Virus record (IMG/VR): IMGVR_UViG_3300024239_000011
Coordinates: 372,001 to 436,000 of that record
Direction: 5' to 3' (one strand)
Length of the DNA: 64,000 bases
In this document: positions 17,482 to 31,840 of the stretch, piece after piece
Layout: each line of letters begins with the position of its first letter
How positions within the stretch are numbered: the first letter of the stretch is position 1
Position numbers and translations under genes: made by a program
The notes under the pieces: generated by a model
Seen by the model: the letters and a program-made list of their open reading frames with translations, nothing else
The model's database searches: none
Told to the model about the DNA's origin: nothing

Positions 17482-19113
17482 TCATGCCGCCAACATCTTA
17501 CCCAGGTCTTGGTCAATTTCGACACCCACTGCCATCTTGAAGTAGGTACCGGACTTCTTCTTCATCGACTTACGGTCGGCATACCACCGAGCCAACAAAC
17601 CCGGAATAACGCCTTCAATATCGGTACGAAAGATGGTGCCGTTGGCAGACAAGCAGAGGTTGCTCCCCTCGGCAAAAATCCACTCGTAGATTTCCTTTGC
17701 GGTCATTTCGTCCGAACGGGACATGGGTACCCCATTCTTGTCGAAATCAACGGTTAAGGTCACATCGCTCTGCTTCATAACCTCTTGGAATTCGACCGAG
17801 CCGAACATTTCATGCCATGCGTCCGTTGGACTCATACCGTCCGCGATACGTTGGTCAATGAGACGGCGCGTCATGGTCTGGCGAATTTGCCCAACCACGG
17901 TTTCCGGGGACATGTTCAATGCGCGAATGCACGACGGGTACAGCGAGTTAATGTCGCAGGCACCTACCCAGCGGTGTAGACCGGTAATAGGGTCACGAAC
18001 GTAAGCGCCCGCCGCCTTGCCTTCCTGCCGAAACCCACGCTTATCAAAGACAATGAAACCGCGCTCATGCGCCTCGTTCACAATGGCTTGGTCGATGATC
18101 GCCACCGAACCCATTGTCGCCTTGAAATCCACACAGATCGAGTGCGCAAGCTGATTGTGAAGCTCGATGAACTTCTTCTTGCGGTCAATCTTCACCAGCA
18201 GCATGGTATCCTGCCGGTTATAGGCGATGAACTTGTTGAAGTCCTTGTTATACAAATCGTGCAGCGACCCTTCGTAAGGGGTCTTGTTCTCATTCACCTC
18301 AAGCTCGCCCACGAAGTCCAGCTTGTAGCTATGAAGCTCCTGATAGGTGTTCTTCTTGTACAGTTCGAGATAGTCAAGGTGTGCCTTACCAACAGTGTCG
18401 AAGGTAAAGACTGTCTTGTTGAACTGCTCGTACTCGCGGCGTACCGGTTCTTTGTCCCACAAACACATACCCTTGGTGTATTCATCACCAAGCGCCTTCT
18501 TGATGCGCAGAACCATGTAGGGAATATCGAAGCCCGTCGAGTTCCAGCCGGTAAATACGTCAACGTCCTCAACGACTTTGAGAAACATTTCCAACATGTC
18601 CCGTTCATTCTTGAACAGGTAGGTGTTGTCAAATTCCGCAACCGCTTCCTTGGCCTCGTCCCATGTCATGGTCTTGGGCGGGACCGCAAGCGTGATCATC
18701 GTGTCAGCCCAACTCAGGTAGACCGAGATCGCATTTACCGGTGCGTAGGGGTTCTCTGGGTTTGAAAAACCGATATCCGGGGAATAATCAACTTCGATAT
18801 CCAGGCATCCTAAATTCAATACCGGTGTCGGTTTTCCGTGATAATGTTCGTATAAAGTATTGAACAATACATTGGTATCGCTTTCAAAAAGGGACTGACC
18901 ATCAAGTTCCTGTTTTTTTGCATAAAACTTGCTTCGATTATTTGTCTCAAATTTTGATAGACGTTCTCCAAAAATGGAGTTGTAGTCACCATTTTTATCA
19001 CGGTAGTAAAGCCTATATGACGGCTCTATCTTGCGTTCTACTCGTTTTCCTGCAACACGTTCAGAAACAAGAATCTTGTCCTCATCTCGATCAAGTATGG
19101 CATCAACATACAT
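17482..19113 (-). CDS. Family B DNA polymerase, N-terminal subunit (N-domain, 3'-5' exonuclease, motif A, first fingers helix)
   Basis: ExoI LDIE, ExoII WNSTGFDIPY, ExoIII YNRQD, motif A DINSLYPS, G.IPGLL..WY..RK. Confidence 0.95.
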   Translation of the reverse strand: MYVDAILDRDEDKILVSERVAGKRVERKIEPSYRLYYRDKNGDYNSIFGERLSKFETNNRSKFYAKKQELDGQSLFESDTNVLFNTLYEHYHGKPTPVLNLGCLDIEVDYSPDIGFSNPENPYAPVNAISVYLSWADTMITLAVPPKTMTWDEAKEAVAEFDNTYLFKNERDMLEMFLKVVEDVDVFTGWNSTGFDIPYMVLRIKKALGDEYTKGMCLWDKEPVRREYEQFNKTVFTFDTVGKAHLDYLELYKKNTYQELHSYKLDFVGELEVNENKTPYEGSLHDLYNKDFNKFIAYNRQDTMLLVKIDRKKKFIELHNQLAHSICVDFKATMGSVAIIDQAIVNEAHERGFIVFDKRGFRQEGKAAGAYVRDPITGLHRWVGACDINSLYPSCIRALNMSPETVVGQIRQTMTRRLIDQRIADGMSPTDAWHEMFGSVEFQEVMKQSDVTLTVDFDKNGVPMSRSDEMTAKEIYEWIFAEGSNLCLSANGTIFRTDIEGVIPGLLARWYADRKSMKKKSGTYFKMAVGVEIDQDLGKMLAA

Positions 19114-21811: not shown

Positions 21812-22297
21812 TTACGTCGGGAAGTTGAACTTACCGAAGCCACTGGCGGCGCGCTTGACGCCGGTCGGGTCGGTGTTGTCGTCATTGACCACCGGAGCGG
21901 GGGTCGAAGTGGGAACGGAAACCGCCGGGACACTGGACATGGGCTGGGTGGTCGAAGTCGATCCGGTCGTCACGGCGGTGCCATGCAGCGCATCGAACTC
22001 GTCAGGGGTCATGGCGTGCTGATTGGTGGCGTCGTAGTTGGACGCCGACTCGTTCGGCGGCAGATACAGGGTGGCGACGACGTGCTGACCGTCCTCGCTG
22101 CGGACGACGGTGATCTGCTCTTCACGATAGCTGTAGTTGGACAGCGCCAGGACGTTGGTGTGCAGGTAATCGCGCACCTGACGGGTGCGGACCCACGTAC
22201 CACGCTTCTTGACTTCGTTGGCGATATCCACGCTGGTGAACATCTTGCCCTGCCCGATGTATTCCTGAACAACGGCTTCGATCTTATCCTGGCTCAT
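21812..22297 (-). CDS. Hypothetical protein, probable winged-helix N-domain and Thr/Ser/Pro-rich tail
   Basis: FTSVDIANEVK...RQVRDYL helices followed by a beta wing; TTGACT-N17-TATTAT at 22327-22355. Confidence 0.65.
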   Translation of the reverse strand: MSQDKIEAVVQEYIGQGKMFTSVDIANEVKKRGTWVRTRQVRDYLHTNVLALSNYSYREEQITVVRSEDGQHVVATLYLPPNESASNYDATNQHAMTPDEFDALHGTAVTTGSTSTTQPMSSVPAVSVPTSTPAPVVNDDNTDPTGVKRAASGFGKFNFPT

Positions 22298-22370
22298 GGC
22301 AAATACCCCGAGAAATGGTTTAAAAAATAATAGATGTTTTCTTTTAAAAAGTCAACCCACCACACAAATT

Positions 22371-22404
22371 TCGCGAGGTATCTGCCCCTGTAGATACCTC
22401 GCGA
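22371..22404. terminator. 13-bp stem just past the PARP stop
   Basis: tcgcgaggtatct-N8-agatacctcgcga. Confidence 0.6.
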
Positions 22405-22411
22405 CTTGTTT

Positions 22412-23932
22412 CTAGCGTTGTTCCAGTTCGATCAGGTGAGTAATCGTGGACTGGGCGGGATCAGCGACGATGAATTCATCGTTCGCCAGATCAGCACCAC
22501 CAGGGGCGTAGATCGAGTTGAAACCACGCGGAGTACCCGACGATAGGGCACGCGGGGCACAGTGAATCTTGCCCATGGTGAACTTGGTGATGAACAGGAA
22601 GGCGTTGCCGCGATGACCGCTGTTGGACAGACCCGACCGCGACCAGTTATTGAGGGCGTAATTCAGAGCCTTCGTGGACACGTTGGCGGCATAGACGCCA
22701 TTACCGTACATACGACCGGTCACGCCCGGCGCGTTCACCGGGGGAACGTAGAAACCATTCATCATGATCGACAGGACGTTGCGGTTCGGGGAACCATGGA
22801 ACAGGTCCACCACGTCATAGTCGCTGACGATGGTCTTGCCACCGCCGGGACGCTTGTGACCGATGATGGTACCAGCAGCACCCTGCTTGGCAGCTTCCAT
22901 GCGCTCCATCATCTTCATGAAACGGGCACGTTCCGCAATGCCTTCCACGTCGTAGCAACGAACCGGCTTCCAGCTATCCAACTGACGATGGTTACGGGTG
23001 CTGTTGAGGTAGTGAAACAGCGTTTCGGTGGTGTCGCGATCCGACATGAACATCTTGATCGGCAGATCGGGCGCCTTACCGTCGTCGGCGTCGTTGGTGA
23101 TCTGCACAGTGGACTTCATCTGGTCCAGCAGATCGTATTCCGCCAGCAACTTCGCCATGTCGAAAATCAGGTCGCTGTCCTGAATAGTATAACCGCGAGC
23201 AAATGGGCGCGGAATCAGCGAGAAAGTCTGGGTATTCAAATCACGGAAATCGCGATTGGACATGTCGGCGCTCGAACCATCGGTCGGGATGAAATTCTTC
23301 AGATCATCCAGCACCGCCAACGCCCGGTTGATGTGATCCAAGGTCAGCGGACCCAGCGGGGTTTCCAGACCATGGGCGGTCATCTTGAATGTAGTCGCCG
23401 TGGTAATGTTGTGAATGTTCTCTTGGAACAGTTGACTGAGAACCTTCTGAACCTGCGGCTCGGAGAACTGACTGAACATGGCAGCCAGACCGCTGTTGCC
23501 ATTCGTTTTCGAGACAGAGGCAGTCGCGGCAGCACCACTCACCTTGCGGATATTGGGCGAACCCACGGTCGGCTGAACCACGTCCACCTTGACGTAGTTT
23601 TCGCGATACTTAGTGCCGTCAGCGGCAGTCTTGGACTTGCCCTTTTCCTTGTCCTTGACGATGGTGGCGAACTCGGCTTCCAGCGACGACAGGTCGGTGT
23701 CGGGACCGCGAACGTCGTACACACCGCCGTCAGCGGTACCGCCCGCCAGACGACCGTAGTGCGAGAACAAGCGATATTGCCCGGTGGACTCGTTGTGCAT
23801 TAGTTCCAAACAGTAGAATTTGTTATTATTCCCGTCCACGTTGCTACACATGAGCAAAGCCCACTTAATAGTTTTATCAAAACCATCCGTGTCGTCAGTG
23901 GGGACTTTAACTGCGCGATAGGACTTGGACAT
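22412..23932 (-). CDS. Poly(ADP-ribose) polymerase (WGR + regulatory helical + catalytic domain)
   Basis: NNNKFY...HYGR (WGR); TPLGPLT..HI..A (regulatory); LFHGS, GRMYGNGVYAA..STKALNY, NDEFIV (H-Y-E triad); TTGACA-N16-TAAGAT at 23962-23989. Confidence 0.92.
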   Translation of the reverse strand: MSKSYRAVKVPTDDTDGFDKTIKWALLMCSNVDGNNNKFYCLELMHNESTGQYRLFSHYGRLAGGTADGGVYDVRGPDTDLSSLEAEFATIVKDKEKGKSKTAADGTKYRENYVKVDVVQPTVGSPNIRKVSGAAATASVSKTNGNSGLAAMFSQFSEPQVQKVLSQLFQENIHNITTATTFKMTAHGLETPLGPLTLDHINRALAVLDDLKNFIPTDGSSADMSNRDFRDLNTQTFSLIPRPFARGYTIQDSDLIFDMAKLLAEYDLLDQMKSTVQITNDADDGKAPDLPIKMFMSDRDTTETLFHYLNSTRNHRQLDSWKPVRCYDVEGIAERARFMKMMERMEAAKQGAAGTIIGHKRPGGGKTIVSDYDVVDLFHGSPNRNVLSIMMNGFYVPPVNAPGVTGRMYGNGVYAANVSTKALNYALNNWSRSGLSNSGHRGNAFLFITKFTMGKIHCAPRALSSGTPRGFNSIYAPGGADLANDEFIVADPAQSTITHLIELEQR

Positions 23933-24021
23933 ATTGATGCTCCAACGAATCATTTGACCGCATCTTAACGTCAAAAATTAAATTGTCAATGGGAAGAACA
24001 ATAAATATAATATAAGAAACT

Positions 24022-25182
24022 ATGGAGAAAATTATGCCAATCTGTAAACATTGTGGCACAGAAACCACACATATCCCAACTCATTATCGACTGCACTGCC
24101 AAGAGTATAAAGAATTCATCACCCAAATTGAAGAGAAACTTACCAAAGAATTTATGATCGCCGAATACATTATTGCTGAAAAATCAGTGGTTGATTTAAC
24201 ACGAGAACTTGGTTTGGAAAAAGGGCGATTGATTGAACAGAAACTCGATGAATATGGTATCGTGCGCCGTCGTAATTACTCATCCACTAAAACCGTCCGT
24301 GATAAGAAGAAACAAACCTATCGTGAACGGTATGGCGTCGATCATCAATCTCAGATCGATACAGTCAAAGAAAAGAAGAAACAAACCTATCGTGAACGGT
24401 ATGGCGTAGAGCATGCGTTGCAATATGCAGAATTTTTTGAAAAAGCTCGACAGACTACCCGCGAACGTTTTGGGGTTGACTACGCCCTTCAAACCGAGGA
24501 GTCCCGCGCAAAACAACGCCAAACTAATTTAGAACGTTATGGTGTTGAGTATTTGCAATCGCGCAATATGCAGGAACAATCAAAACAAACATGTTTAGAA
24601 AAATATGGGGTTGAATATGTGATGCAATCAAACGACATCAAAGCACGCATGGTTGCCACCCACACCGATTTATATGGCGGGATGCTCCGTGGATCACCGT
24701 CCATACGGGGACAAATAGAAAGGACAACTCTCAAACGGTATGGCGTGAAGAATATTTCTACTATAACCCGCGATAAAGCAAAAGCAACCTGTGTACGTCG
24801 TTATGGTGTTGAATTTGCTATGCAAAACCCAACGATTTATGAACAGCAACGCAAATCTGCGTTCCGACGCAAACTATTTGTTTTCCCATCAGGTCACAAA
24901 GAATATCTTCACGGCTATGAGCCGATGGTTATTCTCGACCTACTCAAAGCCGGAATACCCGAAGAGGAAATCATCACTTCTGCCCGCAAAATGCCAAAAA
25001 TCACCTACCAAACCTCCGATGGTAAAACCCACCGCTACTACCCAGACATCTACCTGCCACGATACAATATGTTCATTGAAGTGAAATCCATCTATACGTA
25101 TCGCGCCAACAAAGATATCAACCTACTAAAACGAGAAGCCTGCATTGATGCAGGCTTCCGTTTTAATTTTGCAATACGCTGA
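24022..25182 (+). CDS. Free-standing endonuclease-like protein with ~23-aa (R/K)YGV repeats and C-terminal PD-(D/E)XK domain
   Basis: CKHC...HC finger; about 8 YGV/FGV repeats; RYYPDIY...IEVKS; ATAAATA at 24001. Confidence 0.8.
   Translation: MEKIMPICKHCGTETTHIPTHYRLHCQEYKEFITQIEEKLTKEFMIAEYIIAEKSVVDLTRELGLEKGRLIEQKLDEYGIVRRRNYSSTKTVRDKKKQTYRERYGVDHQSQIDTVKEKKKQTYRERYGVEHALQYAEFFEKARQTTRERFGVDYALQTEESRAKQRQTNLERYGVEYLQSRNMQEQSKQTCLEKYGVEYVMQSNDIKARMVATHTDLYGGMLRGSPSIRGQIERTTLKRYGVKNISTITRDKAKATCVRRYGVEFAMQNPTIYEQQRKSAFRRKLFVFPSGHKEYLHGYEPMVILDLLKAGIPEEEIITSARKMPKITYQTSDGKTHRYYPDIYLPRYNMFIEVKSIYTYRANKDINLLKREACIDAGFRFNFAIR
24304..24407 (+). repeat. 35-bp exact direct repeat with 69-bp period inside the endonuclease gene
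   Basis: aagaagaaacaaacctatcgtgaacggtatggcgt at 24304 and 24373. Confidence 0.85.
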
Positions 25183-25187
25183 TCCGG

Positions 25188-25412
25188 TCACTTATCTACT
25201 TTTACCGGGAGATCAGGAATCTCCCGCGAAGAATAAGCGCAGATAATTTTGGTTTCCGGATGGGTCAGCCACCCACCACCAGCACCACTGCGCCACTCAA
25301 CATAAGTAACGACTTGCGGATTACAGTTTTGTGAAGGGCGAGTAGTGGGTTCGGTACCTTCAACACACCCAAATAGTGCTAAACAAGCACCAACAACTAA
25401 CATCTTACGCAT
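25188..25412 (-). CDS. Small putative lipoprotein
   Basis: MRKMLVVGACLALFGC lipobox; overlaps the metG stop. Confidence 0.55.
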   Translation of the reverse strand: MRKMLVVGACLALFGCVEGTEPTTRPSQNCNPQVVTYVEWRSGAGGGWLTHPETKIICAYSSREIPDLPVKVDK

Positions 25413-26928
25413 TCTTCGGTACCTCAATACGCGGGAAGACAATTGACGGTTCGGGAAGCTTCGCCTCGTAGGGGATGAGAACGTCCTGATGCCGAATTTC
25501 CGCACTGCACAGTTTTAGAATTTTTTCCGCCGATGCGGGAATGACCGGCTGAAGCAGGAACGCCACCTTGACGACGTTCTGAAGAGTGTCGCTCAACACC
25601 TCGTTCAGCTTGTCCGGATCATCTTTCAGCTTCCACGGCTCAGCCGCCGAGAACACACGATTGATATCCGTGGTTGCCGCATGAAGGTGTTCCAGGGCGC
25701 CACGGAAATCCAACGCAGCAAATGCCGCTTGGGCAAAGCTGGCGTAGGTTTCCACCCGGCTGGTCAAGGAAGACCCCACCGCCGAAAACCGCACGATGCC
25801 ATCACAATGGCGATGCAACAGGGTTAGTGCCCTGTTCAACAGGTTACCCAGATCATTGGCGAGTTCGCTATTGTACCGCTTCGTGATGGCATCTTCCGAG
25901 AATTCTCCATCATCACCGAAATTGACTTCACGAAGCAGGAAATACCGCAGCGCGTCCAACCCGTATTTTTCGATTAACGCGGGGACACTGACCGCATTCC
26001 CTTCAGACTTGCCAATCTTCTGCTGTTTGACCAGTTTGTTGCTCGGACGCGTCCACCAACCATGGGCGAATACGCGATTGGGAACCGGCAGACCCGCAGC
26101 CAAAAGAAAAGCAGGCCAAAACACAGCATGGAAACGAACGATATCCTTGCCAACGACATGGGTTACGTCATAACCAGTCCAATCGGTTGCGGGATACCCG
26201 GCAACGGAAAGGTAATTGGTCAGCGCATCCAACCACACATAAATGACGTGTTTTTCGTCCCCAGGCACCGGGATGCCCCAGGAAATGGACGACCGCGACA
26301 CACAAAGGTCATCAAGCCCGCCCTTGACAAATTGCCGCACCTCATTCCGGCGCGGCACCGGCTGAACAAAATCCGTTTCGTACAACTTCAGGAGTTCGTC
26401 GCCCCATTGCGAGAGCCGGAAGAAATAGGCTTCCTCTTCCACCCACTCACACGTGGCGCCGGTTGGATTTGCAGTGACAATCTTACCACCATCAGTATTT
26501 TCGGTAATCGTCACCTCGGACTCTGTGTAATAGGCTTCGTCCTTGAGAGCATACCACCCACCATAGGTGCCCTTGTAAATTTGGTTACGCTCGACCAGGG
26601 TGTTCCATAAATGAATTACCGCTTCGCGGTGCCTGTCATCGGTGGTGCGGATAAAATCGTCGGGAACAACCCCGATCAACGGAAGCAAATTGCGAAAATG
26701 TTGGGAAACATCGTCCACGAAGTCCTTCGGTGCAATTCCTGCCAGTGCAGCCGATTTCTGGACCTTCTGACCATGTTCATCGGTTCCAGTGGTGAACAAC
26801 ACCTCATCGCCATGAAGGCGGTGGAAACGCGCCAAAACGTCGCAAACCACAGTGGTGTACGCATGACCGATATGGGGACGGTCATTCACGTAATAGATGG
26901 GGGTCGTGATTAGCCGCTGTTTGTTCAT
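25405..26928 (-). CDS. metG: Methionyl-tRNA synthetase (short monomeric MetRS1 type)
   Basis: ITTPIYYVN..PHIGHAY, GTDEHGQK, YVWLDALTNY, GKDI.RFH..FWPA, KIGKS (KMSKS-like). Confidence 0.96.
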   Translation of the reverse strand: MNKQRLITTPIYYVNDRPHIGHAYTTVVCDVLARFHRLHGDEVLFTTGTDEHGQKVQKSAALAGIAPKDFVDDVSQHFRNLLPLIGVVPDDFIRTTDDRHREAVIHLWNTLVERNQIYKGTYGGWYALKDEAYYTESEVTITENTDGGKIVTANPTGATCEWVEEEAYFFRLSQWGDELLKLYETDFVQPVPRRNEVRQFVKGGLDDLCVSRSSISWGIPVPGDEKHVIYVWLDALTNYLSVAGYPATDWTGYDVTHVVGKDIVRFHAVFWPAFLLAAGLPVPNRVFAHGWWTRPSNKLVKQQKIGKSEGNAVSVPALIEKYGLDALRYFLLREVNFGDDGEFSEDAITKRYNSELANDLGNLLNRALTLLHRHCDGIVRFSAVGSSLTSRVETYASFAQAAFAALDFRGALEHLHAATTDINRVFSAAEPWKLKDDPDKLNEVLSDTLQNVVKVAFLLQPVIPASAEKILKLCSAEIRHQDVLIPYEAKLPEPSIVFPRIEVPKNA

Positions 26929-26993
26929 GGGTCATTCCTGTCTACTCGAACCCAGACCGTTTAGCACGTCAGATGTATAGAATCAAGGCAGAC

Positions 26994-27022
26994 AAAAAGA
27001 AAAGGGCGGTTTCCCGCCCCTT
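26994..27022 (-). terminator. Intrinsic terminator
   Basis: GC stem gggcgg/ccgccc with a U-tract on the minus strand. Confidence 0.7.
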
Positions 27023-27275
27023 ACCAAGGGTCCACCATTTGGCGTTTGAGCCGACGACCTTCCTCGGCGGAAACAATTCGTCCTTCACCCATGTCCTTGA
27101 TGAAGTTCTCGCATTCCGCCTTGGTCATCACGTCCGATACGAAATGCGTACCGACAACACAATGTGTACCGACAACTTCAGGAACCGAAACGGGAACCGG
27201 CTGGGGTCGATACCCACGCACTGCCTGCTCGGATTGCTGCAAATACTGATACGGTTTCATTTCGAACCTACGCAT
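27021..27275 (-). CDS. Hypothetical protein
   Basis: Start overlapping the HNH stop, SD GAGG. Confidence 0.5.
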   Translation of the reverse strand: MRRFEMKPYQYLQQSEQAVRGYRPQPVPVSVPEVVGTHCVVGTHFVSDVMTKAECENFIKDMGEGRIVSAEEGRRLKRQMVDPW

Positions 27276-27621
27276 AATCAGCCTCGTGTTTCTTTCGAAG
27301 ATGTTCTGGGTAGCGCCCAGAACGTGCCCATAAATCTTCTTTCGGGCGTTCAGCAACTCGTTGCCGACCGCGTTCCTCATTGCACTTTTTACAAGCTGCA
27401 ACGTGCCGTTTATCTTCGGTCATCACTTGGCGTTGTGGGTGAAATCGATCAAACAAATGATCAAGGGTACAAAGATTATCGGGGAAATGCCGTGTCTTCG
27501 TACACGTATCATGATCGAAATCCAACAACATCGGATTACCGCACCAATAACATTTTCCACCTTGCTCGTGGTAGCATTTGATGCGGGAACGACGCCTTTT
27601 TTCAGAAGACGAAATAGTCAT
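27268..27621 (-). CDS. Small HNH endonuclease
   Basis: QGGKCYWCG...TLDHL...VAACKKCN. Confidence 0.85.
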   Translation of the reverse strand: MTISSSEKRRRSRIKCYHEQGGKCYWCGNPMLLDFDHDTCTKTRHFPDNLCTLDHLFDRFHPQRQVMTEDKRHVAACKKCNEERGRQRVAERPKEDLWARSGRYPEHLRKKHEADYA

Positions 27622-27627
27622 ATTGGA

Positions 27628-27942
27628 TTATTTACGAATCACCTTAACGTGGATGCGGTGGAAGAACGTCGAGAAGTCCCACTTGGACATGGGAACCCCC
27701 TCGATCTTGATCTTCACATTAGGGTTGTAGTCCGCAGTAAACCACTTCAGAAGTTCTTTAAACGCTTTACACGCGGCTTTTTCTTCCTCGTCAGATGGGC
27801 GATGCCCTGGACCTTGCCCGTGAAACCGATACCCATAGAGTTCGGCTTCGTCGCCCGCGTACCTGTTATTACCATGGTAGCATTCCACCAACTCGGCATA
27901 CAACCGGGCAATATCTTTTACTGGGAGGTTGATCAAGGACAT
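27628..27942 (-). CDS. Hypothetical protein
   Basis: 104-aa ORF. Confidence 0.6.
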   Translation of the reverse strand: MSLINLPVKDIARLYAELVECYHGNNRYAGDEAELYGYRFHGQGPGHRPSDEEEKAACKAFKELLKWFTADYNPNVKIKIEGVPMSKWDFSTFFHRIHVKVIRK

Positions 27943-28044
27943 TACTTATACCTATCAAGTACAATCACAAGAATGGCGAACCCCATAAGTAGGACTTGGG
28001 TGGGCGTCAAACATTCCGCCCACCCAACCCCTTATACCAGCATA

Positions 28045-30498
28045 TTAGGCAGCTTTCTTGCCCAAAATCGCAGCTTCCTTAGCGGCTTCTTTCTGATCCT
28101 TCACACGCTGAAGGCTATCCGCCACGGTCTTGTCAAGTCGCAGTTCCACGAATCTCGGGAGGAAAAGTGAGTACCGACCGTTGCTTCCCGTGGGCGGCAT
28201 GATGTCGTTGGCTTTGACGGTCATGATCTTACCGATCACATTATCACGATCCTTCCAAAGCTGCTGACGCATGGCATCGGTATAGCCCGACACGTCAACC
28301 GAAAGCAAACCATCCGACGTGCGGCAGGTAATCGATCCGAATGTGCTTTCGTTCTTACCGTTACCGGCGACGAAGCCGACGATTTCCAGATCAACCTCAA
28401 ACTCCATCTTGAGCTTGACCTGTTCCTTTGAAGTGCCATCCTTCCAGATAGCGCCCGGCATCTTGATGACGGTGCCTTCCTTGCCGCGACCCAGCATGTC
28501 GATATAGTGTTCGTAGGCTTCGCGCAGCGAATGAACCACGCGGGTCGGGATCAGGCGAACCAGACCAGTTTCGGTCAGCTTCGTCATCAGGGCGCCCAGT
28601 TCGTCTTCCGGCAGCGTCTTGATCGCAGCCAGGGTCATACCCGCCAACTGCGCCACCAGAGACAGCAGACGTTCGCGGTACGCGACGTTGTACTTGCCCT
28701 TTGGCTTCACTTCTGACAGCGGGATTTGGTCCCAGATCATGTAGATCGGCTGCTCGTTGGCAGCGAAGGTACCGCCCTTGAGAACGCTATTGAGGATACC
28801 GTTACCGATCTCGCGCGGCAGAACCTTGCCGTCACGCAACACCAGCAATTCGCCGTGTTGCTGCGTGCCCGTGGACAGGCGAGAACGGATTTCGTCCACC
28901 AGGGCGGGGAACTGCTCGATGGGGAACGGCGAACCCTGACGGCTGGCGATACCAACCACACCCGCAGCTTCGTTGTCCACGTTGGCGAACATACCGTCCG
29001 CCTTCTCCTGGGATAGCACACCAAGCTTCCAGTCCCACGTGTCCAGCTTCACATCTTTAGGAAGCGAACAGCGCATGTACGGGAACTCGGGGATCAACCC
29101 CTTCACCGCCTTGTTGATGGTGCTTTCAGAGAAATTAGCGCGCAAATCCTTGCGCACGATGCGCCACAATAGATCAGCCGAAGCCTGGGTCAGGCGTTCA
29201 GTTTCCGCCCGGAACGCTTCACGGGCATCGCCGCCGGTCAGCTTGCGGGCGATCAGTTCATCGAGAATCTGCCACGTCTTGGCGTCGAAGGTGGCGGCAC
29301 CAAACGGACCCGTGGGACGCGCCGGAATGATGCCGTAGGTCTTGAAGGGGTTGTAGGTGTATTCCAGCACCCGGCAGAAAGCGGCGTCGCCCGCCGCGCC
29401 CTTAACCATCGACTCCTTGGCGTTCTTGCTCGATTCACCCGCGATCTTGTCGATCAACGCGAGGATGGCATCGGACCCGCCATTAGACGAAGCGGCAACC
29501 ACGGGCGCCGACTTGCCCATATCAAAATCGATCCAAGCAGCCGACGTACCGGCGGTGTAAAGGGCATTGGAATTCTTGATCAGGACGCCACCAACCTGGG
29601 CACAATAATCCGCGAATTCCTTGGCGGCATCCGGGGCGTCGAAATCGATCAGCTTCTTCGGAGCAACATAGACGTTGCCATCGGTGAAATGCTGGAACAT
29701 CCCGGTAAGGGCAGCCAGCACCTCGACGCGATCCTTCTGGGTGATCGAGCAGGTACCCGCCTTGAAATCCGCAAACGGGATCACATCGACCACCGCGAAC
29801 TTGGTCGGAGTGGCAGCCGTGAACCCGCCATCCAAAACGATGCTGCCCGGCACTCCGGGCAGCATCTTTTCCAGACCCTTTACGATATCCGGATAGCTGT
29901 GGTTCTCGCGCCCGAAGCTGGCATGCAGGGTTACGGTACCCGCATCCTTATTGATCACCGCGAACAACCGGGACGCCAGTTTGACATCCAAATACTGGGG
30001 ACCGGTCGGCAGGGTCGTGGAAACCGTCGCCACTTGGGCGCCGAAAATGGGGATCAGATACTTAGTGGCATCACCACCGATCTGGCTCAGAACCGCATTA
30101 ATCTCGTAGGGACGGATATTGCAGCGAAGGTCGCGCAGCAGAATGCGGCGGTACCAAAGATTCCATTCCTTAGCATCGGAAAGATTCGCCGCCTTCATCG
30201 CAGCAGCGCGGGCGTTATCGCCCGACAATTCACGGGACGCCAGCTTGCTGGTCAAGTTGGTGAAATCCGCCCACGACAGGGTATCGACCGCAAACAGGTC
30301 ACCCAGATCATTGCCGTCTTCCTGAATTTCAGGAGCCTTGGTCAGACCAAAGGTCTGATAGTTGTCGTAACAGAGCCGGGCGCCTTCGAAGAACTCGATG
30401 CATCCCGCATCCCAGGCAGCGCGAATGATGGTTTCCTTCGCAGCCGTATCGCTGGCAGCGGTAGCGGCAAGTTTCTCGACAACGTGAATGGGCTTCAT
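28045..30498 (-). CDS. ATP-dependent DNA ligase with an extra degenerate ligase module at the N-terminus
   Basis: C-terminal module: EKADG, SRQG, HGEL, WDQIP, EGTVIK, VKLK, LPRF; the N-terminal module repeats DBD+NTase with degraded motifs; TTGATT-N17-TAGGAT at 30526-30554. Confidence 0.9.
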   Translation of the reverse strand: MKPIHVVEKLAATAASDTAAKETIIRAAWDAGCIEFFEGARLCYDNYQTFGLTKAPEIQEDGNDLGDLFAVDTLSWADFTNLTSKLASRELSGDNARAAAMKAANLSDAKEWNLWYRRILLRDLRCNIRPYEINAVLSQIGGDATKYLIPIFGAQVATVSTTLPTGPQYLDVKLASRLFAVINKDAGTVTLHASFGRENHSYPDIVKGLEKMLPGVPGSIVLDGGFTAATPTKFAVVDVIPFADFKAGTCSITQKDRVEVLAALTGMFQHFTDGNVYVAPKKLIDFDAPDAAKEFADYCAQVGGVLIKNSNALYTAGTSAAWIDFDMGKSAPVVAASSNGGSDAILALIDKIAGESSKNAKESMVKGAAGDAAFCRVLEYTYNPFKTYGIIPARPTGPFGAATFDAKTWQILDELIARKLTGGDAREAFRAETERLTQASADLLWRIVRKDLRANFSESTINKAVKGLIPEFPYMRCSLPKDVKLDTWDWKLGVLSQEKADGMFANVDNEAAGVVGIASRQGSPFPIEQFPALVDEIRSRLSTGTQQHGELLVLRDGKVLPREIGNGILNSVLKGGTFAANEQPIYMIWDQIPLSEVKPKGKYNVAYRERLLSLVAQLAGMTLAAIKTLPEDELGALMTKLTETGLVRLIPTRVVHSLREAYEHYIDMLGRGKEGTVIKMPGAIWKDGTSKEQVKLKMEFEVDLEIVGFVAGNGKNESTFGSITCRTSDGLLSVDVSGYTDAMRQQLWKDRDNVIGKIMTVKANDIMPPTGSNGRYSLFLPRFVELRLDKTVADSLQRVKDQKEAAKEAAILGKKAA

Positions 30499-30944: not shown

Positions 30945-31193
30945 ATGACAACTAATATTTTAGAAGACCTTATCGGATCGGACGATAAAATCGTAAAAAC
31001 AACAGCCGTCAAATTAAAGGCATATCAAGGTGCTTTGGAAATGGGTGAAATGTCCAAAGCGGAATACGACGAACTGATAGCAGACTTACTTGATCTTTCA
31101 GGAATTGATCATCTGGCGTCCGATCTTGAACGAAAGACTGCTATAAGAAAAGCATTTGAAACTATGTTAAGTATAGCATCAGTAGTGGCTTAA
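30945..31193 (+). CDS. Hypothetical protein paired with the lipoprotein
   Basis: 82-aa helical ORF 1 nt downstream. Confidence 0.65.
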   Translation: MTTNILEDLIGSDDKIVKTTAVKLKAYQGALEMGEMSKAEYDELIADLLDLSGIDHLASDLERKTAIRKAFETMLSIASVVA

Positions 31194-31840
31194 CGGGAAA
31201 ATACCTGTTCCATAAGGTCTTCAAGTTCTTCAGTCTTGACCACCGTGAACCCCATCCGATTAAGCTCTTCAATGAACATTTGCGGAGTTTTTTCATCAAC
31301 TTTACGATAGTCGTTCGGGAGTTCTTGCCACGGACGAAGCATCGGATGGGTTTTTGCACGAGGATTCACTTTTTCACCATAGCGCCAACCTTTCTGTACC
31401 CGTTCGTTCATCCACATAGTATGCTGTGATTTAGCAATCGCTTCGCATAGTTTTTCATAAGAATCGTCTTTGACCACAATGGCGTCAGCGAGCATTTCGC
31501 GCTGCTGTGATATTTCAACCTGGGTTGTTTCTAATAAAAAGTCTTTGTCGTAGTAGGTATTCCACTGCTCTAAAACGGTCTTGATTTCTTTGTTGGTCAA
31601 ATCACGCTTCAAAGGAATGTCGTAGATATGTTTTCCATCAGCCATTTTACGGTGAATCAACATAACTTCAGCGGGACCACCTTTCGGGCGCACTAATGAT
31701 ACTGATGAAATGATGTTCTGCGGTCCATAAGTCTCTACGATCTTAAACCACCGACGAACGTCGGTCTTACTAAGCTCTTCATCGACTTGGATTCGGATAT
31801 AGCGTGGTAGTTTGACGGCCACTGGTTGGGACGCATCCAT
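31190..31840 (-). CDS. RyR-domain protein
   Basis: H..WM.ER...GWRYG.....KTHPMLRPW.ELP. Confidence 0.85.
   Translation of the reverse strand: MDASQPVAVKLPRYIRIQVDEELSKTDVRRWFKIVETYGPQNIISSVSLVRPKGGPAEVMLIHRKMADGKHIYDIPLKRDLTNKEIKTVLEQWNTYYDKDFLLETTQVEISQQREMLADAIVVKDDSYEKLCEAIAKSQHTMWMNERVQKGWRYGEKVNPRAKTHPMLRPWQELPNDYRKVDEKTPQMFIEELNRMGFTVVKTEELEDLMEQVFSR

What the first reader, a model, noticed from the sequence alone, without database searches (positions are those of the whole stretch)
21812..30498. Candidate phage DNA-break response module: PARP + winged-helix neighbour + tandem ligase
Seen: within 9 kb lie the PARP, an adjacent winged-helix-like gene and the double ligase. All three are on the same strand, each has its own sigma70-like promoter, and they share a GC3-rich codon style. 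Established: in eukaryotes, PARP signalling recruits ligase activity to breaks. Inference, speculative: a parallel sense-and-religate system that protects the phage genome from restriction or CRISPR cuts. Proximity alone is weak evidence.
Basis: inference. Interest (0 to 1): 0.65.

Follow-up and report, generated by a model that had tools for sequence, protein, structure and literature searches.

The report
Phage PARP, its partner, odd ligase
A 543-kb uncultured phage carries a eukaryote-type PARP enzyme whose real, widely conserved partner is the small winged-helix gene next to it (predicted to plug its tail in beside the PARP active site), while the nearby DNA ligase, an intact T4-type ligase fused to a dead second ligase module, is only a loose though recurrent neighbour.

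Summary
The genes are there, on the minus strand. They are a 161-aa winged-helix protein (21812-22297), a WGR/regulatory/catalytic PARP with an intact H-Y-E triad (22412-23932), and an 817-aa ligase (28045-30498).

The strongest result is the PARP + winged-helix pair.
- The 161-aa family lies downstream of PARP, on the same strand, in 33 of 51 informative PARP loci across the deepest branches of the phage PARP tree.
- No other gene family near PARP is nearly as frequent.
- A complex prediction passes its controls (0.73 vs 0.49). It puts the conserved C-terminal tail beside catalytic E500/H393.
- In another clade Macro-like and NADAR genes sit between the two.

The "double ligase" is not a duplication. 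A catalytically dead Pmar-Lig-type module without an OB domain is fused to an intact T4-type ligase.

Ligase linkage to PARP is moderate.
- The order is syntenic in close relatives.
- Across independent lineages a ligase (ATP- or NAD-dependent) lies within 10 kb of PARP in 6 of 17 (about 2 expected). DnaB and RNR controls give 0.
- Four of 12 near-complete PARP phages have no ligase.
- No PAR-reader domain is found on the ligase.

Verdict: partly supported. The module is an ADP-ribosylation system with a break-sealing theme, not a proven three-part machine.

The parts
21812..22297 (-). 161-aa PARP-partner protein (P0003). It has a winged-helix domain (aa 1-108, nt 21974-22297), a disordered Ser/Thr/Pro-rich linker (aa 109-147) and a conserved C-terminal tail ...S-G-F-G-K-F-N-F-P-T (nt 21815-21856).
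   Evidence: No Pfam, PHROG, NCBIfam or PADLOC hit. In the AF2 model aa 1-108 have pLDDT about 90 with H-H-H-beta-hairpin topology. Foldseek hits are weak, but almost all are winged-helix proteins. The family lies downstream of PARP on the same strand in 33 loci. It has 1,860 clusters in the 1.84-billion-protein library. The tail is predicted to dock on PARP.
22327..22355 (-). Promoter-like site of the 161-aa gene (TTGACT-17-TATTAT)
   Evidence: 10 of 12 matches; sequence read.
22371..22404 (.). 13-15 bp GC-rich inverted repeat between the PARP stop codon and the 161-aa promoter. It is terminator-like but has a poor T tract.
22412..23932 (-). PARP, 506 aa from the ATG at 23932. WGR is about nt 23639-23848, the helical regulatory domain about 23090-23461, and the catalytic ART domain about 22421-22813. 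Catalytic residues are H393, Y428 and E500 (numbering of P0002, which starts at the TTG at 23974).
   Evidence: Pfam PF05406, PF02877 and PF00644 are all above cut-off. H393, G394, Y428 and E500 are invariant in an 18-sequence alignment. The nearest solved structures are PARP2 and PARP1. There are 195 homologs of 36-68% identity.
23962..23989 (-). Promoter-like site of PARP (TTGACA-16-TAAGAT). It overlaps the TTG of the mechanical ORF, so the ATG at 23932 is the likely start.
24022..25182 (+). DUF7487 homing endonuclease. It is an insertion between MetRS and PARP and not part of the module.
   Evidence: Pfam PF24308, E 4e-67, and PHROG homing-endonuclease hits. GC3 is 0.40. It is absent at this place in relatives L003 and L007. 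Identical pieces occur in a wastewater run.
25405..26928 (-). Methionyl-tRNA synthetase. It is a syntenic neighbour with no evident role in the module.
   Evidence: Pfam PF09334, E 2e-100. Conserved in L003 and L007.
27268..27621 (-). HNH-endonuclease-like 117-aa ORF, probably a mobile insertion.
   Evidence: PHROG HNH families, E 2.5e-5. GC3 is 0.41.
29479..30498 (-). Ligase N-module (aa 1-340). It is a Pmar-Lig-type DNA-binding domain plus nucleotidyltransferase fold. It has no OB domain and its catalytic motifs are degenerate, so it is a pseudo-ligase.
   Evidence: phmmer against 6RAU/6RAR gives E 1e-22 over aa 20-229. Foldseek of the AF2 model hits 6RAS at E 6.5e-18. Motif I is K-L-(gap)-A-S, motif III LDGG, motif IV GGVLIK and motif V WIDFD, where active relatives have KLDG, LDGE, EGIMIK and WLKVK. 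It is also dead in L007, where the motif I lysine is lost as well.
28045..29478 (-). Ligase C-module (aa 341-817). It is an intact T4-type ATP-dependent DNA ligase with motif I K499-A-D-G.
   Evidence: PHROG_114, E 1e-129 over aa 342-810. PF01068 is above cut-off. T4 ligase 6DT1 matches at E 3e-25. It is 43-49% identical to Pseudomonas phage ligases. It is the only PF01068 hit in the genome.

Best explanation
The region holds two things.

(1) A two-gene ADP-ribosylation module.
- The first gene is a PARP of the PARP2/3 or bacterial type, with WGR, helical regulatory and ART domains and an intact H-Y-E triad.
- The second, just downstream, is a dedicated partner. It has a winged-helix domain, a flexible Ser/Thr/Pro-rich linker and a short conserved aromatic C-terminal tail.
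- Shown: the domain content, the conserved triad, and the conserved gene pairing across phage PARP lineages.
- Predicted: the tail docks on the ART domain. It contacts the strand before H393, the helix before the invariant H329, and the residues flanking E500.
- Inferred: as in PARP1-3 and the DNA-dependent Herpetosiphon PARP, nicks or ends bound by the WGR domain release the regulatory domain and switch the enzyme on.
- Inferred: the winged-helix partner sits on DNA and feeds its tail or linker into the acceptor side of the active site. It would be either the main acceptor or an HPF1-like specificity factor. ADP-ribose would then be laid down at DNA lesions on the phage or host genome.
- Erasers (Macro, NADAR) and NAD+ supply (NadE, NAMPT-like, NADAR-NMNAT) are encoded elsewhere in this genome. 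In another phage clade, Macro-like and NADAR genes lie inside the PARP-partner cluster.

(2) The phage's only ATP-dependent DNA ligase, 4 kb upstream.
- It is an intact T4-type enzyme carrying an N-terminal catalytically dead ligase module.
- That module is most plausibly an extra nick- or DNA-binding, or protein-docking, module.
- The ligase is a recurrent neighbour of PARP in independent lineages. This fits a shared break-handling theme. It is not an obligatory or physically demonstrated component.
For: Architecture and triad.

The pair.
- The partner family is the most frequent co-located family by far: 32 loci by BLAST cluster and 34 ORF hits by HMM, against 11 loci for the next real family.
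- It is always downstream and on the same strand, with a gap from -22 nt to 9 kb.
- It is present in all 17 informative rows of the window's PARP clade, in all 10 rows of a second clade, and in deep-branching lineages.
- A divergent version probably fills the same slot in a further clade (hhalign probability 78%, E 1.8e-5).
- This genome has exactly one PARP and one partner gene.

Binding.
- ipSAE was 0.73, 0.74 and 0.73. The best control scored 0.49 and the others 0.00.
- That mark was reached by 58 of 80 solved complexes and by 2 of 110 mismatched pairs.
- The runs agree in at least 47% of their contacts, and the partner's pLDDT is at least 67.
- The interface is partner aa 143-161 against PARP 318-326, 353-364, 382-391, 431, 464 and 499-501.

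Tails differ by clade but stay aromatic. They read F-x-K-F-N-F-P here and L-W-x-x-L-F...S-L-F-P in group A, and long forms carry an AbrB/MazE-like domain instead.

Erasers and NAD genes: the NADAR (PF08719, E 2e-35) and Macro-like genes between PARP and partner are shown. The own-genome copies are shown.

Ligase.

Background: bacterial PARPs are DNA-activated in vitro (PMC8120803, read).
Against: - There is no expression or biochemical data, and no RNA run holds the region.
- One complex control, with the partner kept and PARP replaced, scored 0.49. The tail is therefore somewhat 'sticky' in the model. My own alignments were used, so the calibration holds only roughly.
- In this phage a hairpin and a separate promoter-like site lie between PARP and the partner gene. 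Co-transcription is therefore not evident.
- Cultured PARP phages (XacN1, FBKp34) and several uncultured clades show no detectable partner near PARP.
- One of four randomly sampled family members had no PARP within 3.8 kb upstream.
- Foldseek similarity of the winged helix to solved structures is weak (best E 9e-3). DNA binding is not shown.
- The WGR match is only just above the Pfam cut-off, and the motif reads Y-G-R.
Confidence: 0.5

Rival explanations
1. PARP, the winged-helix protein and the double ligase form one sense-and-religate machine. PARP marks breaks made by restriction enzymes or CRISPR. The ligase is recruited through ADP-ribose binding by its dead N-module, and it reseals the phage genome.
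For: - Ligase-MetRS-PARP synteny is kept in the window's clade.
- A ligase lies within 10 kb of PARP in 6 of 17 independent lineages, against 2.0 expected (P about 0.007). ATP- and NAD-dependent ligases substitute for one another, and DnaB and RNR controls give 0.
- In L036 the ligase lies between PARP and the partner gene. In L034 it lies directly upstream of PARP.
- Rnl1, a weak RNA-ligase-like match and a PNK-phosphatase lie near PARP in other members of the window's clade.
- The dead N-module keeps a nucleotidyltransferase fold, with pLDDT 80-90 over aa 160-320. It also keeps conserved patches shared with L007. A retained non-catalytic function is therefore plausible.
Against: - No macro, PBZ, BRCT or WWE domain is found on the ligase.
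- The N-module evolves fast: 36% identity against 63% for the C half.
- The double form was found only in the window phage and L007. None of 2,342 phage records with a ligase match covers 80% of the query.
- Four of 12 near-complete PARP phages lack any ligase, and most ligases lie 16-330 kb away from PARP.
- Mobile and unrelated genes, and separate promoters, separate the genes here.
- Nothing bears on restriction or CRISPR.
Confidence: 0.17
2. Host takeover or counter-defence. The PARP modifies host proteins (RNA polymerase, nucleases, defence proteins) or drains or redirects NAD+, in the way T4 Alt and Mod enzymes act. The winged-helix protein is a transcription factor or a targeting subunit for host DNA. 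The ligase is unrelated.
For: - This is the function suggested in the literature for jumbo-phage PARPs (PMC7824862; PMC9503650).
- The genome carries its own NAD+ synthesis genes, NadE, NAMPT-like and NADAR-NMNAT. This fits heavy NAD+ use or host NAD+ depletion.
- Macro and NADAR could serve to undo host ADP-ribosylation.
Against: - The retained WGR and autoinhibitory helical domains, with invariant residues across phage PARPs, point to nucleic-acid-triggered activity rather than a constitutive toxin-like enzyme.
- The recurrent ligase neighbourhood is not explained.
- No head-packaging or MuF context is seen.
- There are no PADLOC hits.
Confidence: 0.22
3. The adjacency of the winged-helix gene is regulatory only. 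It is a small transcription factor controlling PARP or neighbouring genes, with no physical complex. The complex prediction is a false positive driven by a sticky disordered tail.
For: - Winged-helix proteins next to enzymes are usually regulators, and long forms carry an AbrB/MazE-type DNA-binding domain.
- One control reached 0.49.
- A separate promoter and a hairpin lie between the two genes here.
Against: - The gene is always downstream of PARP and on the same strand, often overlapping or within 25 nt. It is never divergent, as autoregulators often are.
- The terminal tail is conserved and specific to each clade.
- The prediction passes a mark reached by only 2 of 110 mismatched pairs, and it lands on the active-site face.
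Confidence: 0.15

Closest known systems
Bacterial and phage PARPs (Herpetosiphon aurantiacus PARP, Clostridioides difficile CD160 PARP, Xanthomonas phage XacN1 BBA65562)
   Same: The WGR, PARP_reg and PARP catalytic architecture and the H-Y-E triad are the same. XacN1-type phage PARPs are 27% identical over 93% of the length. HaPARP needs DNA for activity (PMC8120803).
   Different: The known bacterial systems pair PARP with PARG. No PARG was detected here, though that search's control rang nowhere, so it is uninformative. XacN1 and FBKp34 show no homolog of the winged-helix partner near PARP. The papers I read describe no partner.
Human PARP1/2 with HPF1
   Same: A separate small protein is predicted to bind the ART domain next to the catalytic glutamate. 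It also contacts the helix that, by my reading of the alignment, corresponds to the PARP1 H826 region. That is the face HPF1 uses (the mapping is from memory of PARP1 numbering, so it is an inference).
   Different: There is no sequence or fold relation to HPF1. The contact here is a short C-terminal peptide on a winged-helix protein. No catalytic residue is known to be contributed by the partner. The partner may simply be the substrate.
T4 DNA ligase (PDB 6DT1) and T4-like phage ligases (PHROG 114)
   Same: The C-module (aa 341-817) has the same domain order and motifs I, III, IV and V. It is 43-49% identical to Pseudomonas phage ligases.
   Different: It carries an extra 340-aa N-terminal module that no other phage record in the collection has.
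Pmar-Lig (Prochlorococcus marinus ATP-dependent ligase, PDB 6RAR/6RAS/6RAU)
   Same: The N-module shares its DNA-binding domain and nucleotidyltransferase fold. Stand-alone relatives P0004 and P0005 are 39% and 32% identical to it.
   Different: The N-module lacks the OB domain. It has also lost the D-G of motif I, the Glu of motifs III and IV, and both Lys of motif V.
Human DNA ligase III with its N-terminal PARP-like zinc finger, and the XRCC1-PAR recruitment route
   Same: Conceptually similar: a ligase with an extra N-terminal nick- or DNA-sensing module, encoded in a genome that also has a PARP.
   Different: The domains are unrelated, and no PAR-reader domain is detected. This is an analogy only.
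DarT-NADAR / DarTG reversible DNA ADP-ribosylation systems
   Same: In group A phages an ADP-ribosyltransferase gene is clustered with NADAR and Macro-like genes. NADARs reverse guanine ADP-ribosylation of DNA (PMC11543638 and PMC11125620, abstracts).
   Different: The transferase here is a PARP, not DarT, and it is not a toxin-antitoxin pair. In the window's genome NADAR and Macro lie 175 kb and 85 kb away from PARP.

Membership tests
PARP (PARP1-3-like, DNA-dependent ADP-ribosyltransferase) | ART catalytic domain with the H-Y-E triad | tested here: met
   PF00644 scores 56.4 bits against a cut-off of 26.7. H393, Y428 and E500 are invariant in 18 homologs. The segment around E500 aligns to the PARP2 'YNEYIV' segment.
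PARP (PARP1-3-like, DNA-dependent ADP-ribosyltransferase) | Helical regulatory (autoinhibitory) domain N-terminal to the ART domain | tested here: met
   PF02877 scores 37.5 bits against a cut-off of 26.8, over aa 172-295.
PARP (PARP1-3-like, DNA-dependent ADP-ribosyltransferase) | WGR domain | tested here: met
   PF05406 scores 24.7 bits against a cut-off of 22, over aa 43-112. Y73, G74 and R75 are invariant, so the motif reads Y-G-R rather than W-G-R. The PARP2 WGR aligns weakly.
PARP (PARP1-3-like, DNA-dependent ADP-ribosyltransferase) | DNA-break-stimulated (poly)ADP-ribosylation activity | not testable with these tools
   Needs an enzyme assay.
ATP-dependent DNA ligase, T4 type (C-module aa 341-817) | Nucleotidyltransferase motifs I (KxDG), III, IV and V | tested here: met
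   K499-A-D-G, HGELLV, EGTVIK and QVKLK are read from the alignments. PF01068 scores 32.6 bits against a cut-off of 26.2.
ATP-dependent DNA ligase, T4 type (C-module aa 341-817) | C-terminal OB domain | tested here: inconclusive
   PF14743 scores 21.2 bits, below its cut-off of 28. However, PHROG_114 covers aa 342-810 (E 1e-129) and T4 ligase 6DT1 aligns over aa 647-799.
ATP-dependent DNA ligase (N-module aa 1-340) | Ligase DNA-binding domain plus nucleotidyltransferase fold | tested here: met
   phmmer against 6RAU gives E 1e-22. Foldseek against 6RAS gives E 6.5e-18.
ATP-dependent DNA ligase (N-module aa 1-340) | Catalytic motifs and OB domain | tested here: not met
   Motif I has lost D-G, and in L007 it has lost the lysine as well. 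The Glu of motifs III and IV is replaced by Gly. Motif V reads WIDFD. The alignment ends before the OB domain of its 450-aa relatives.
Winged-helix DNA-binding domain (161-aa protein) | H1-H2-H3 followed by a beta-hairpin wing | tested here: met
   In the AF2 model the helices span aa 2-15, 22-31 and 38-52 and the strands aa 58-66 and 72-79, with pLDDT about 90.
Winged-helix DNA-binding domain (161-aa protein) | Significant structural match to solved winged-helix proteins, and DNA binding | tested here: inconclusive
   The best Foldseek E-value is 8.7e-3. The top hits are PadR, TFIIE, TFIIIC, Cdt1 and RTP, all winged helices. DNA binding was not tested.
PAR-dependent ligase recruitment (eukaryotic XRCC1/LIG3-like logic) | A PAR- or ADP-ribose-reader domain on the ligase or on an adaptor | tested here: not met
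   Pfam, NCBIfam and PADLOC find no macro, PBZ, BRCT or WWE domain on the ligase or its small neighbours.
PAR-dependent ligase recruitment (eukaryotic XRCC1/LIG3-like logic) | Co-occurrence of PARP and ligase across relatives | tested here: inconclusive
   A ligase lies within 10 kb of PARP in 6 of 17 ligase-bearing lineages, against 2.0 expected. DnaB gives 0 of 15 and RNR 0 of 11. However, 4 of 12 near-complete PARP phage genomes have no ligase.
HPF1-like PARP accessory factor | Binds the ART domain beside the catalytic Glu and changes acceptor specificity | tested here: inconclusive
   A contact with D499, F501, V387-F391 and Y322-T326 is predicted only. There is no homology to HPF1, and the effect on specificity cannot be tested here.

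The most novel reading that the evidence does not exclude
Huge phages carry a self-contained, reversible 'mark and seal' system for DNA ends. A WGR-PARP is held on DNA by a dedicated winged-helix protein whose tail completes or occupies the active site, a prokaryotic counterpart of PARP-HPF1. Together they ADP-ribosylate the partner or the DNA ends themselves at breaks. This shields the ends from host exonucleases. Macro or NADAR enzymes then remove the mark, and the neighbouring ligase (here with a dead-ligase sensor module) reseals the DNA. That would make the PARP-accessory-factor logic, so far known only from animals, an ancient phage invention.
Probability: 0.13. Interest if true: 0.85.

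Novelty: new variant of a known kind. Interest (0 to 1): 0.66.

Why it matters
Phage and bacterial PARPs are known, but their function is not, and none has a described partner. Three results matter.

- An uncharacterised family is tied to PARP. It has more than 1,800 sequence clusters and no Pfam, PHROG or NCBIfam model. Its members are consistently encoded just downstream of phage PARPs and are predicted to dock at the active-site face. This gives a concrete, testable handle on what prokaryotic PARPs do. It also bears on whether accessory-factor control of PARPs, as with HPF1 in animals, is older than eukaryotes.
- Two unrelated ligase types recur next to PARP, and Macro-like and NADAR genes lie inside the cluster in another clade. 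Both point to nucleic-acid break handling rather than plain host-protein modification.
- The fusion of a dead ligase module to an intact ligase is a clean example of a pseudo-enzyme domain recruited by its own enzyme family.

Tried and rejected
- Megablast of the region against deposited phages found no match.
- There are no tRNA genes in the window.
- Single-sequence scans of IMG/VR with PARP and with the ligase N half found almost nothing. Only the alignment-based scan worked.
- The word search with the ligase N half gave 3 hits. Its length window follows the whole 817-aa protein (449-1430 aa), and the two stand-alone hits (449 and 451 aa) sit at its lower edge. The small number therefore says nothing about how common stand-alone relatives are.
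- The PARG search found nothing, but its control rang in no genome, so it is uninformative.
- PolB was tried as a replication-module control. It was detected in only 3 of 37 records and could not be used. DnaB and RNR were used instead.
- The 28-sequence partner alignment had no stretch conserved enough for a collection scan. The 8-sequence alignment only re-found three known PARP contigs.
- The reciprocal context sampling was limited by short contigs. One had PARP directly upstream, one had a Macro-like gene, one was too short, and one had no PARP within 3.8 kb.
- Longer 'fusion' members of the partner family showed no consistent fused domain (Ham1, ACP). These are probably gene-calling run-ons.
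- GC3 as evidence of a functional link was rejected. The same style is shared by NadE, a ferredoxin-like gene, an IS1595 transposase and others.
- No RNA run holds the region. The reads tool gave contigs only, so transcription units could not be tested.
- PADLOC and NCBIfam gave nothing for PARP or the partner.

Full report
WHERE WE ARE. The window is bases 372001-436000 of a 543,035-bp IMG/VR virus record that CheckV rates complete. GC content is 48.7%. Near-identical DNA is held by four subsurface-metagenome runs of one study. The phage is uncultured, and megablast finds no near relative among deposited phages.

THE OBSERVATION. On the minus strand the order is as follows.
- Ligase, 30498-28045.
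- A 104-aa ORF, 27942-27628.
- An HNH-like ORF, 27621-27268.
- MetRS, 26928-25405.
- On the plus strand, a DUF7487 homing endonuclease, 24022-25182.
- PARP, 23932-22412.
- The 161-aa gene, 22297-21812.

Further downstream lie unknown ORFs and the N-terminal part of a split family-B DNA polymerase at 19113-17482. Four other genes lie between PARP and the ligase. Two of these are mobile endonucleases with low GC3 (0.40 and 0.41).

Promoter-like sites at 10 of 12 matches precede PARP and the 161-aa gene. A 13-15 bp hairpin separates those two genes. Upstream of the ligase the scan finds nothing, and by eye there is only an 8/12 match.

GC3 is 0.81, 0.70 and 0.71 for the 161-aa gene, PARP and the ligase. 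These are the highest value in the genome and twice the 98th percentile. Other top-GC3 genes are NadE, a ferredoxin-like gene, an IS1595 transposase and an acyltransferase/AMP-binding protein, scattered over the genome. The style therefore marks a class of genes, not this trio.

PARP. Pfam finds WGR, the helical regulatory domain and the catalytic domain, all above their cut-offs. In an alignment of 18 homologs H393, G394, Y428 and E500 are invariant. So are Y73-G74-R75 in the WGR domain. The nearest solved structures are PARP2 and PARP1. The word search returns 195 homologs of 36-68% identity, many on contigs of 100-850 kb. Deposited phages with a PARP include XacN1, Xoo-sp13, Stenotrophomonas CM1 and RAS14, Klebsiella FBKp34-like phages and Cellulophaga phages. 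Phage PARPs are therefore known. The literature I could read treats their role as unknown or as host-protein modification (PMC7824862, PMC9503650, PMC8120803).

THE 161-aa GENE IS THE REAL PARTNER. It has no hit in Pfam, PHROGs, NCBIfam or PADLOC.
- Structure. The AF2 model has a confident (pLDDT about 90) three-helix plus beta-hairpin domain in aa 1-108 and a disordered linker in aa 109-153. Foldseek matches are weak, but nearly all are winged-helix proteins.
- First homologs. The word search gave six homologs. Every one that came with context lies downstream of a PARP.
- Wider scan. I took 45 PARP loci from IMG/VR plus the metagenome contigs and searched them with a family HMM. The family is present in 33 loci. 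It is always on the PARP strand and always downstream, with gaps from an overlap of 22 nt to 9 kb.
- Ranking. In an all-against-all clustering of every ORF within 10 kb of PARP it is the top co-located family, with 32 loci. The next real family has 11.
- Phylogeny. On a PARP tree it is present in all 17 informative rows of the window's clade (support 100), in all 10 rows of a second clade ('group A'), in L025 and L057, and in a deep branch (L026, L027, L034, L036). The tree needs at least 5 gains or losses.
- A divergent version. In one 'negative' clade the gene directly downstream of PARP resembles the family's N-terminus by profile-profile comparison (78%, E 1.8e-5).
- Exceptions. XacN1, FBKp34 and the XacN1-like uncultured clade show no member near PARP.
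- Family size. A profile search of 1.84 billion representatives finds 1,860 clusters, 1,140 of them at E <= 1e-10.
- Reverse sampling. Of four members sampled at even steps down the listed hits, one had PARP 10 nt upstream, one had a group-A-type Macro-like gene upstream, one contig was too short, and one showed no PARP within 3.8 kb.
- Copy number. This genome has exactly one PARP and one family member.

PREDICTED CONTACT. The controlled complex prediction gave ipSAE 0.73, 0.74 and 0.73. The best control scored 0.49 (partner kept, PARP replaced), and the controls with the partner replaced scored 0.00. The mark was reached by 58 of 80 solved complexes and by 2 of 110 mismatched pairs. The runs agree in at least 47% of their contacts, and the partner's pLDDT is at least 67. 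Because my own alignments were used, these counts hold only roughly.

The confident contacts involve only the partner's last residues, F154 and F157-T161.
- On PARP they touch T318, L319, Y322, S325 and T326, in the helix before the invariant H329.
- They also touch F353 and M356-G364, and I382-V383.
- They touch V387-F391, the strand leading into H393.
- They touch N431 (just after Y428), K464, and D499 and F501 on either side of catalytic E500.

By my reading of the alignment to PARP1 this is the acceptor or HPF1-binding face. That mapping rests on remembered PARP1 numbering and is an inference.

The tail is conserved within clades: [S/T]-x-[F/M/I/Y]-x-[K/R/N]-F-x-[F/W/M]-P in the window's clade, and L-W-x-x-L-F...S-L-F-P in group A. 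Longer family members carry an AbrB/MazE-like C-terminal domain instead.

OTHER ADP-RIBOSE GENES. In group A the order is PARP, x, Macro-like (weak, E 0.0056), NADAR (E 2e-35), partner. NADAR also lies within 10 kb of PARP in L014, L018, L019 and L027. In the window's genome the equivalents are dispersed.
- A Macro gene lies at 479370-479981.
- A NADAR-NMNAT fusion lies at 219493-220884.
- Next to that fusion are a NAMPT-like gene and a glutamine-dependent NAD synthetase at 214243-216018.

The genome therefore encodes a writer, candidate erasers and NAD+ supply.

THE LIGASE. The C half (aa 341-817) is an ordinary T4-type ATP-dependent ligase. PHROG_114 matches at E 1e-129. Motif I is K499-A-D-G, and motifs III-V are present. 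T4 ligase 6DT1 matches at E 3e-25, and it is 43-49% identical to Pseudomonas phage ligases.

The N half (aa 1-340) is nearest to a different ligase lineage.
- It resembles Pmar-Lig (6RAU, E 1e-22; Foldseek 6RAS, E 6.5e-18).
- Stand-alone 450-aa relatives are 39% and 32% identical.
- It stops before the OB domain.
- It has lost the D-G of motif I, the Glu of motifs III and IV, and both Lys of motif V.

A relative, L007, has the same 788-aa fusion. There the N-module has lost the lysine as well. The N halves are 36% identical and the C halves 63%.

The ligase is therefore a fusion of an intact ligase with a dead ligase-derived module, kept in two diverged phages. It is not a tandem duplicate. 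None of the 2,342 deposited phage records with a ligase match covers 80% of the protein. It is the only PF01068 gene in the genome.

IS THE LIGASE LINKED TO PARP? Within the window's clade the order RyR protein, ligase, MetRS, PARP, partner, PolB is syntenic. This shows common descent rather than function.

Across 37 PARP-bearing IMG/VR records, 13 have an ATP-dependent ligase and 12 an NAD-dependent one. Of the 12 records that are at least 90% complete, 4 have neither. After collapsing close relatives, 17 lineages carry a ligase. Six of them have it within 10 kb of PARP.
- L024, L034, L035, L036 and L048 have ATP-type ligases at 1.4-7 kb.
- Group A has an NAD-type LigA at 4-7 kb.

Uniform placement predicts 2.0, giving P about 0.007. 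L053 and the window's own clade add two more cases. The same calculation for DnaB-type helicase gives 0 of 15 lineages (1.0 expected) and for RNR large subunit 0 of 11 (0.7 expected). The ligase proximity is therefore not simply 'PARP sits in the replication block'.

In other members of the window's clade an Rnl1 RNA ligase (L010), a PNK-phosphatase (L013) and a weak RNA-ligase-like match (L012) lie near PARP. This supports a shared break-handling theme. The sample is small, lineage independence is judged by eye from the tree, and most ligases lie far away.

WHAT I CONCLUDE. The core, conserved unit is PARP plus the winged-helix partner. The most likely mechanism is an ADP-ribosylation switch triggered by DNA lesions, in which the partner tethers PARP to DNA and presents its tail to the active site. 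The ligase is a recurrent but dispensable neighbour. Nothing supports PAR reading by its N-module, which looks like an additional DNA or nick-binding (or protein-docking) module. The restriction or CRISPR protection idea is neither supported nor excluded.

LIMITS. All functional statements are inferences from sequence, predicted structure and gene order. No RNA data exist for this phage. The word search sees only proteins of 0.55-1.75 times the query length, which affects as noted under Tried and rejected.

Noticed in passing
window 24022-25182 (+); also L010 8881-9891, L013 1124-2551, L034, L043: Homing endonucleases sit next to PARP again and again. They are DUF7487 here and in L010, LAGLIDADG in L013, and GIY-YIG in L034 and L043. 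A wastewater run holds contig pieces identical to the window's DUF7487 gene (23871-24402 and 24505-24877, 0 differences). Its PARP-like piece differs at 50 of 356 bases. The endonuclease therefore appears to move between phages and habitats.
   Followed up: partly
window 25405-26928 (-): A phage-encoded methionyl-tRNA synthetase (PF09334, E 2e-100) is kept between the ligase and PARP in relatives L003 and L007. ARAGORN finds no tRNA gene in the 64-kb window.
   Followed up: no
G000:C1 214243-220884 (outside the window): An NAD+ gene cluster. It holds a glutamine-dependent NAD synthetase (GC3 0.79, second highest in the genome), a NAMPT-like gene, a DUF723 endonuclease-like insertion, and a NADAR-NMNAT fusion (PF08719 + PF01467). 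A second weaker NADAR-like hit lies at 67760-68698.
   Followed up: partly
G000:C1 479370-479981 (outside the window): A stand-alone Macro-domain protein (PF01661, 32.8 bits) lies about 85 kb from PARP. It is a candidate eraser.
   Followed up: no
window 17482-19113 (-): A 543-aa ORF holds only the exonuclease domain and the first part of the polymerase domain of a family-B DNA polymerase. It is 71% identical to L003. This suggests a split PolB whose other part lies elsewhere.
   Followed up: no
(protein cluster records of P0001 and P0003): The ligase and the 161-aa protein are also on record on a contig of 869,618 bp. That is longer than the 543,035-bp IMG/VR record rated 100% complete. It may be a concatemer, a larger relative, or a sign that the record is incomplete.
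   Followed up: no
L037, L043, L050, L054, L055, L058 (group A), about 4-7 kb upstream of PARP: An NAD-dependent LigA (about 627 aa) lies on the PARP strand in the clade whose cluster runs PARP, Macro-like, NADAR, partner. A ligase that consumes NAD+ therefore sits beside a PARP that also consumes it.
   Followed up: partly
L012 9268-9939 and 10001-10465: Two partner-family genes lie in tandem downstream of one PARP. The first (224 aa) has two winged-helix-like repeats and no aromatic tail.
   Followed up: no
window 31190-31840 (-): A RyR-domain protein (PF02026) lies upstream of the ligase and is conserved in L007 (49% identity). Its function in phages is unknown.
   Followed up: no
L003 14502-14962: A weak ART-PolyVal match (PF18760) on the product of a gene that runs off the end of the locus, about 9.5 kb downstream of PARP in the closest relative. 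tblastn finds no counterpart in the window.
   Followed up: partly
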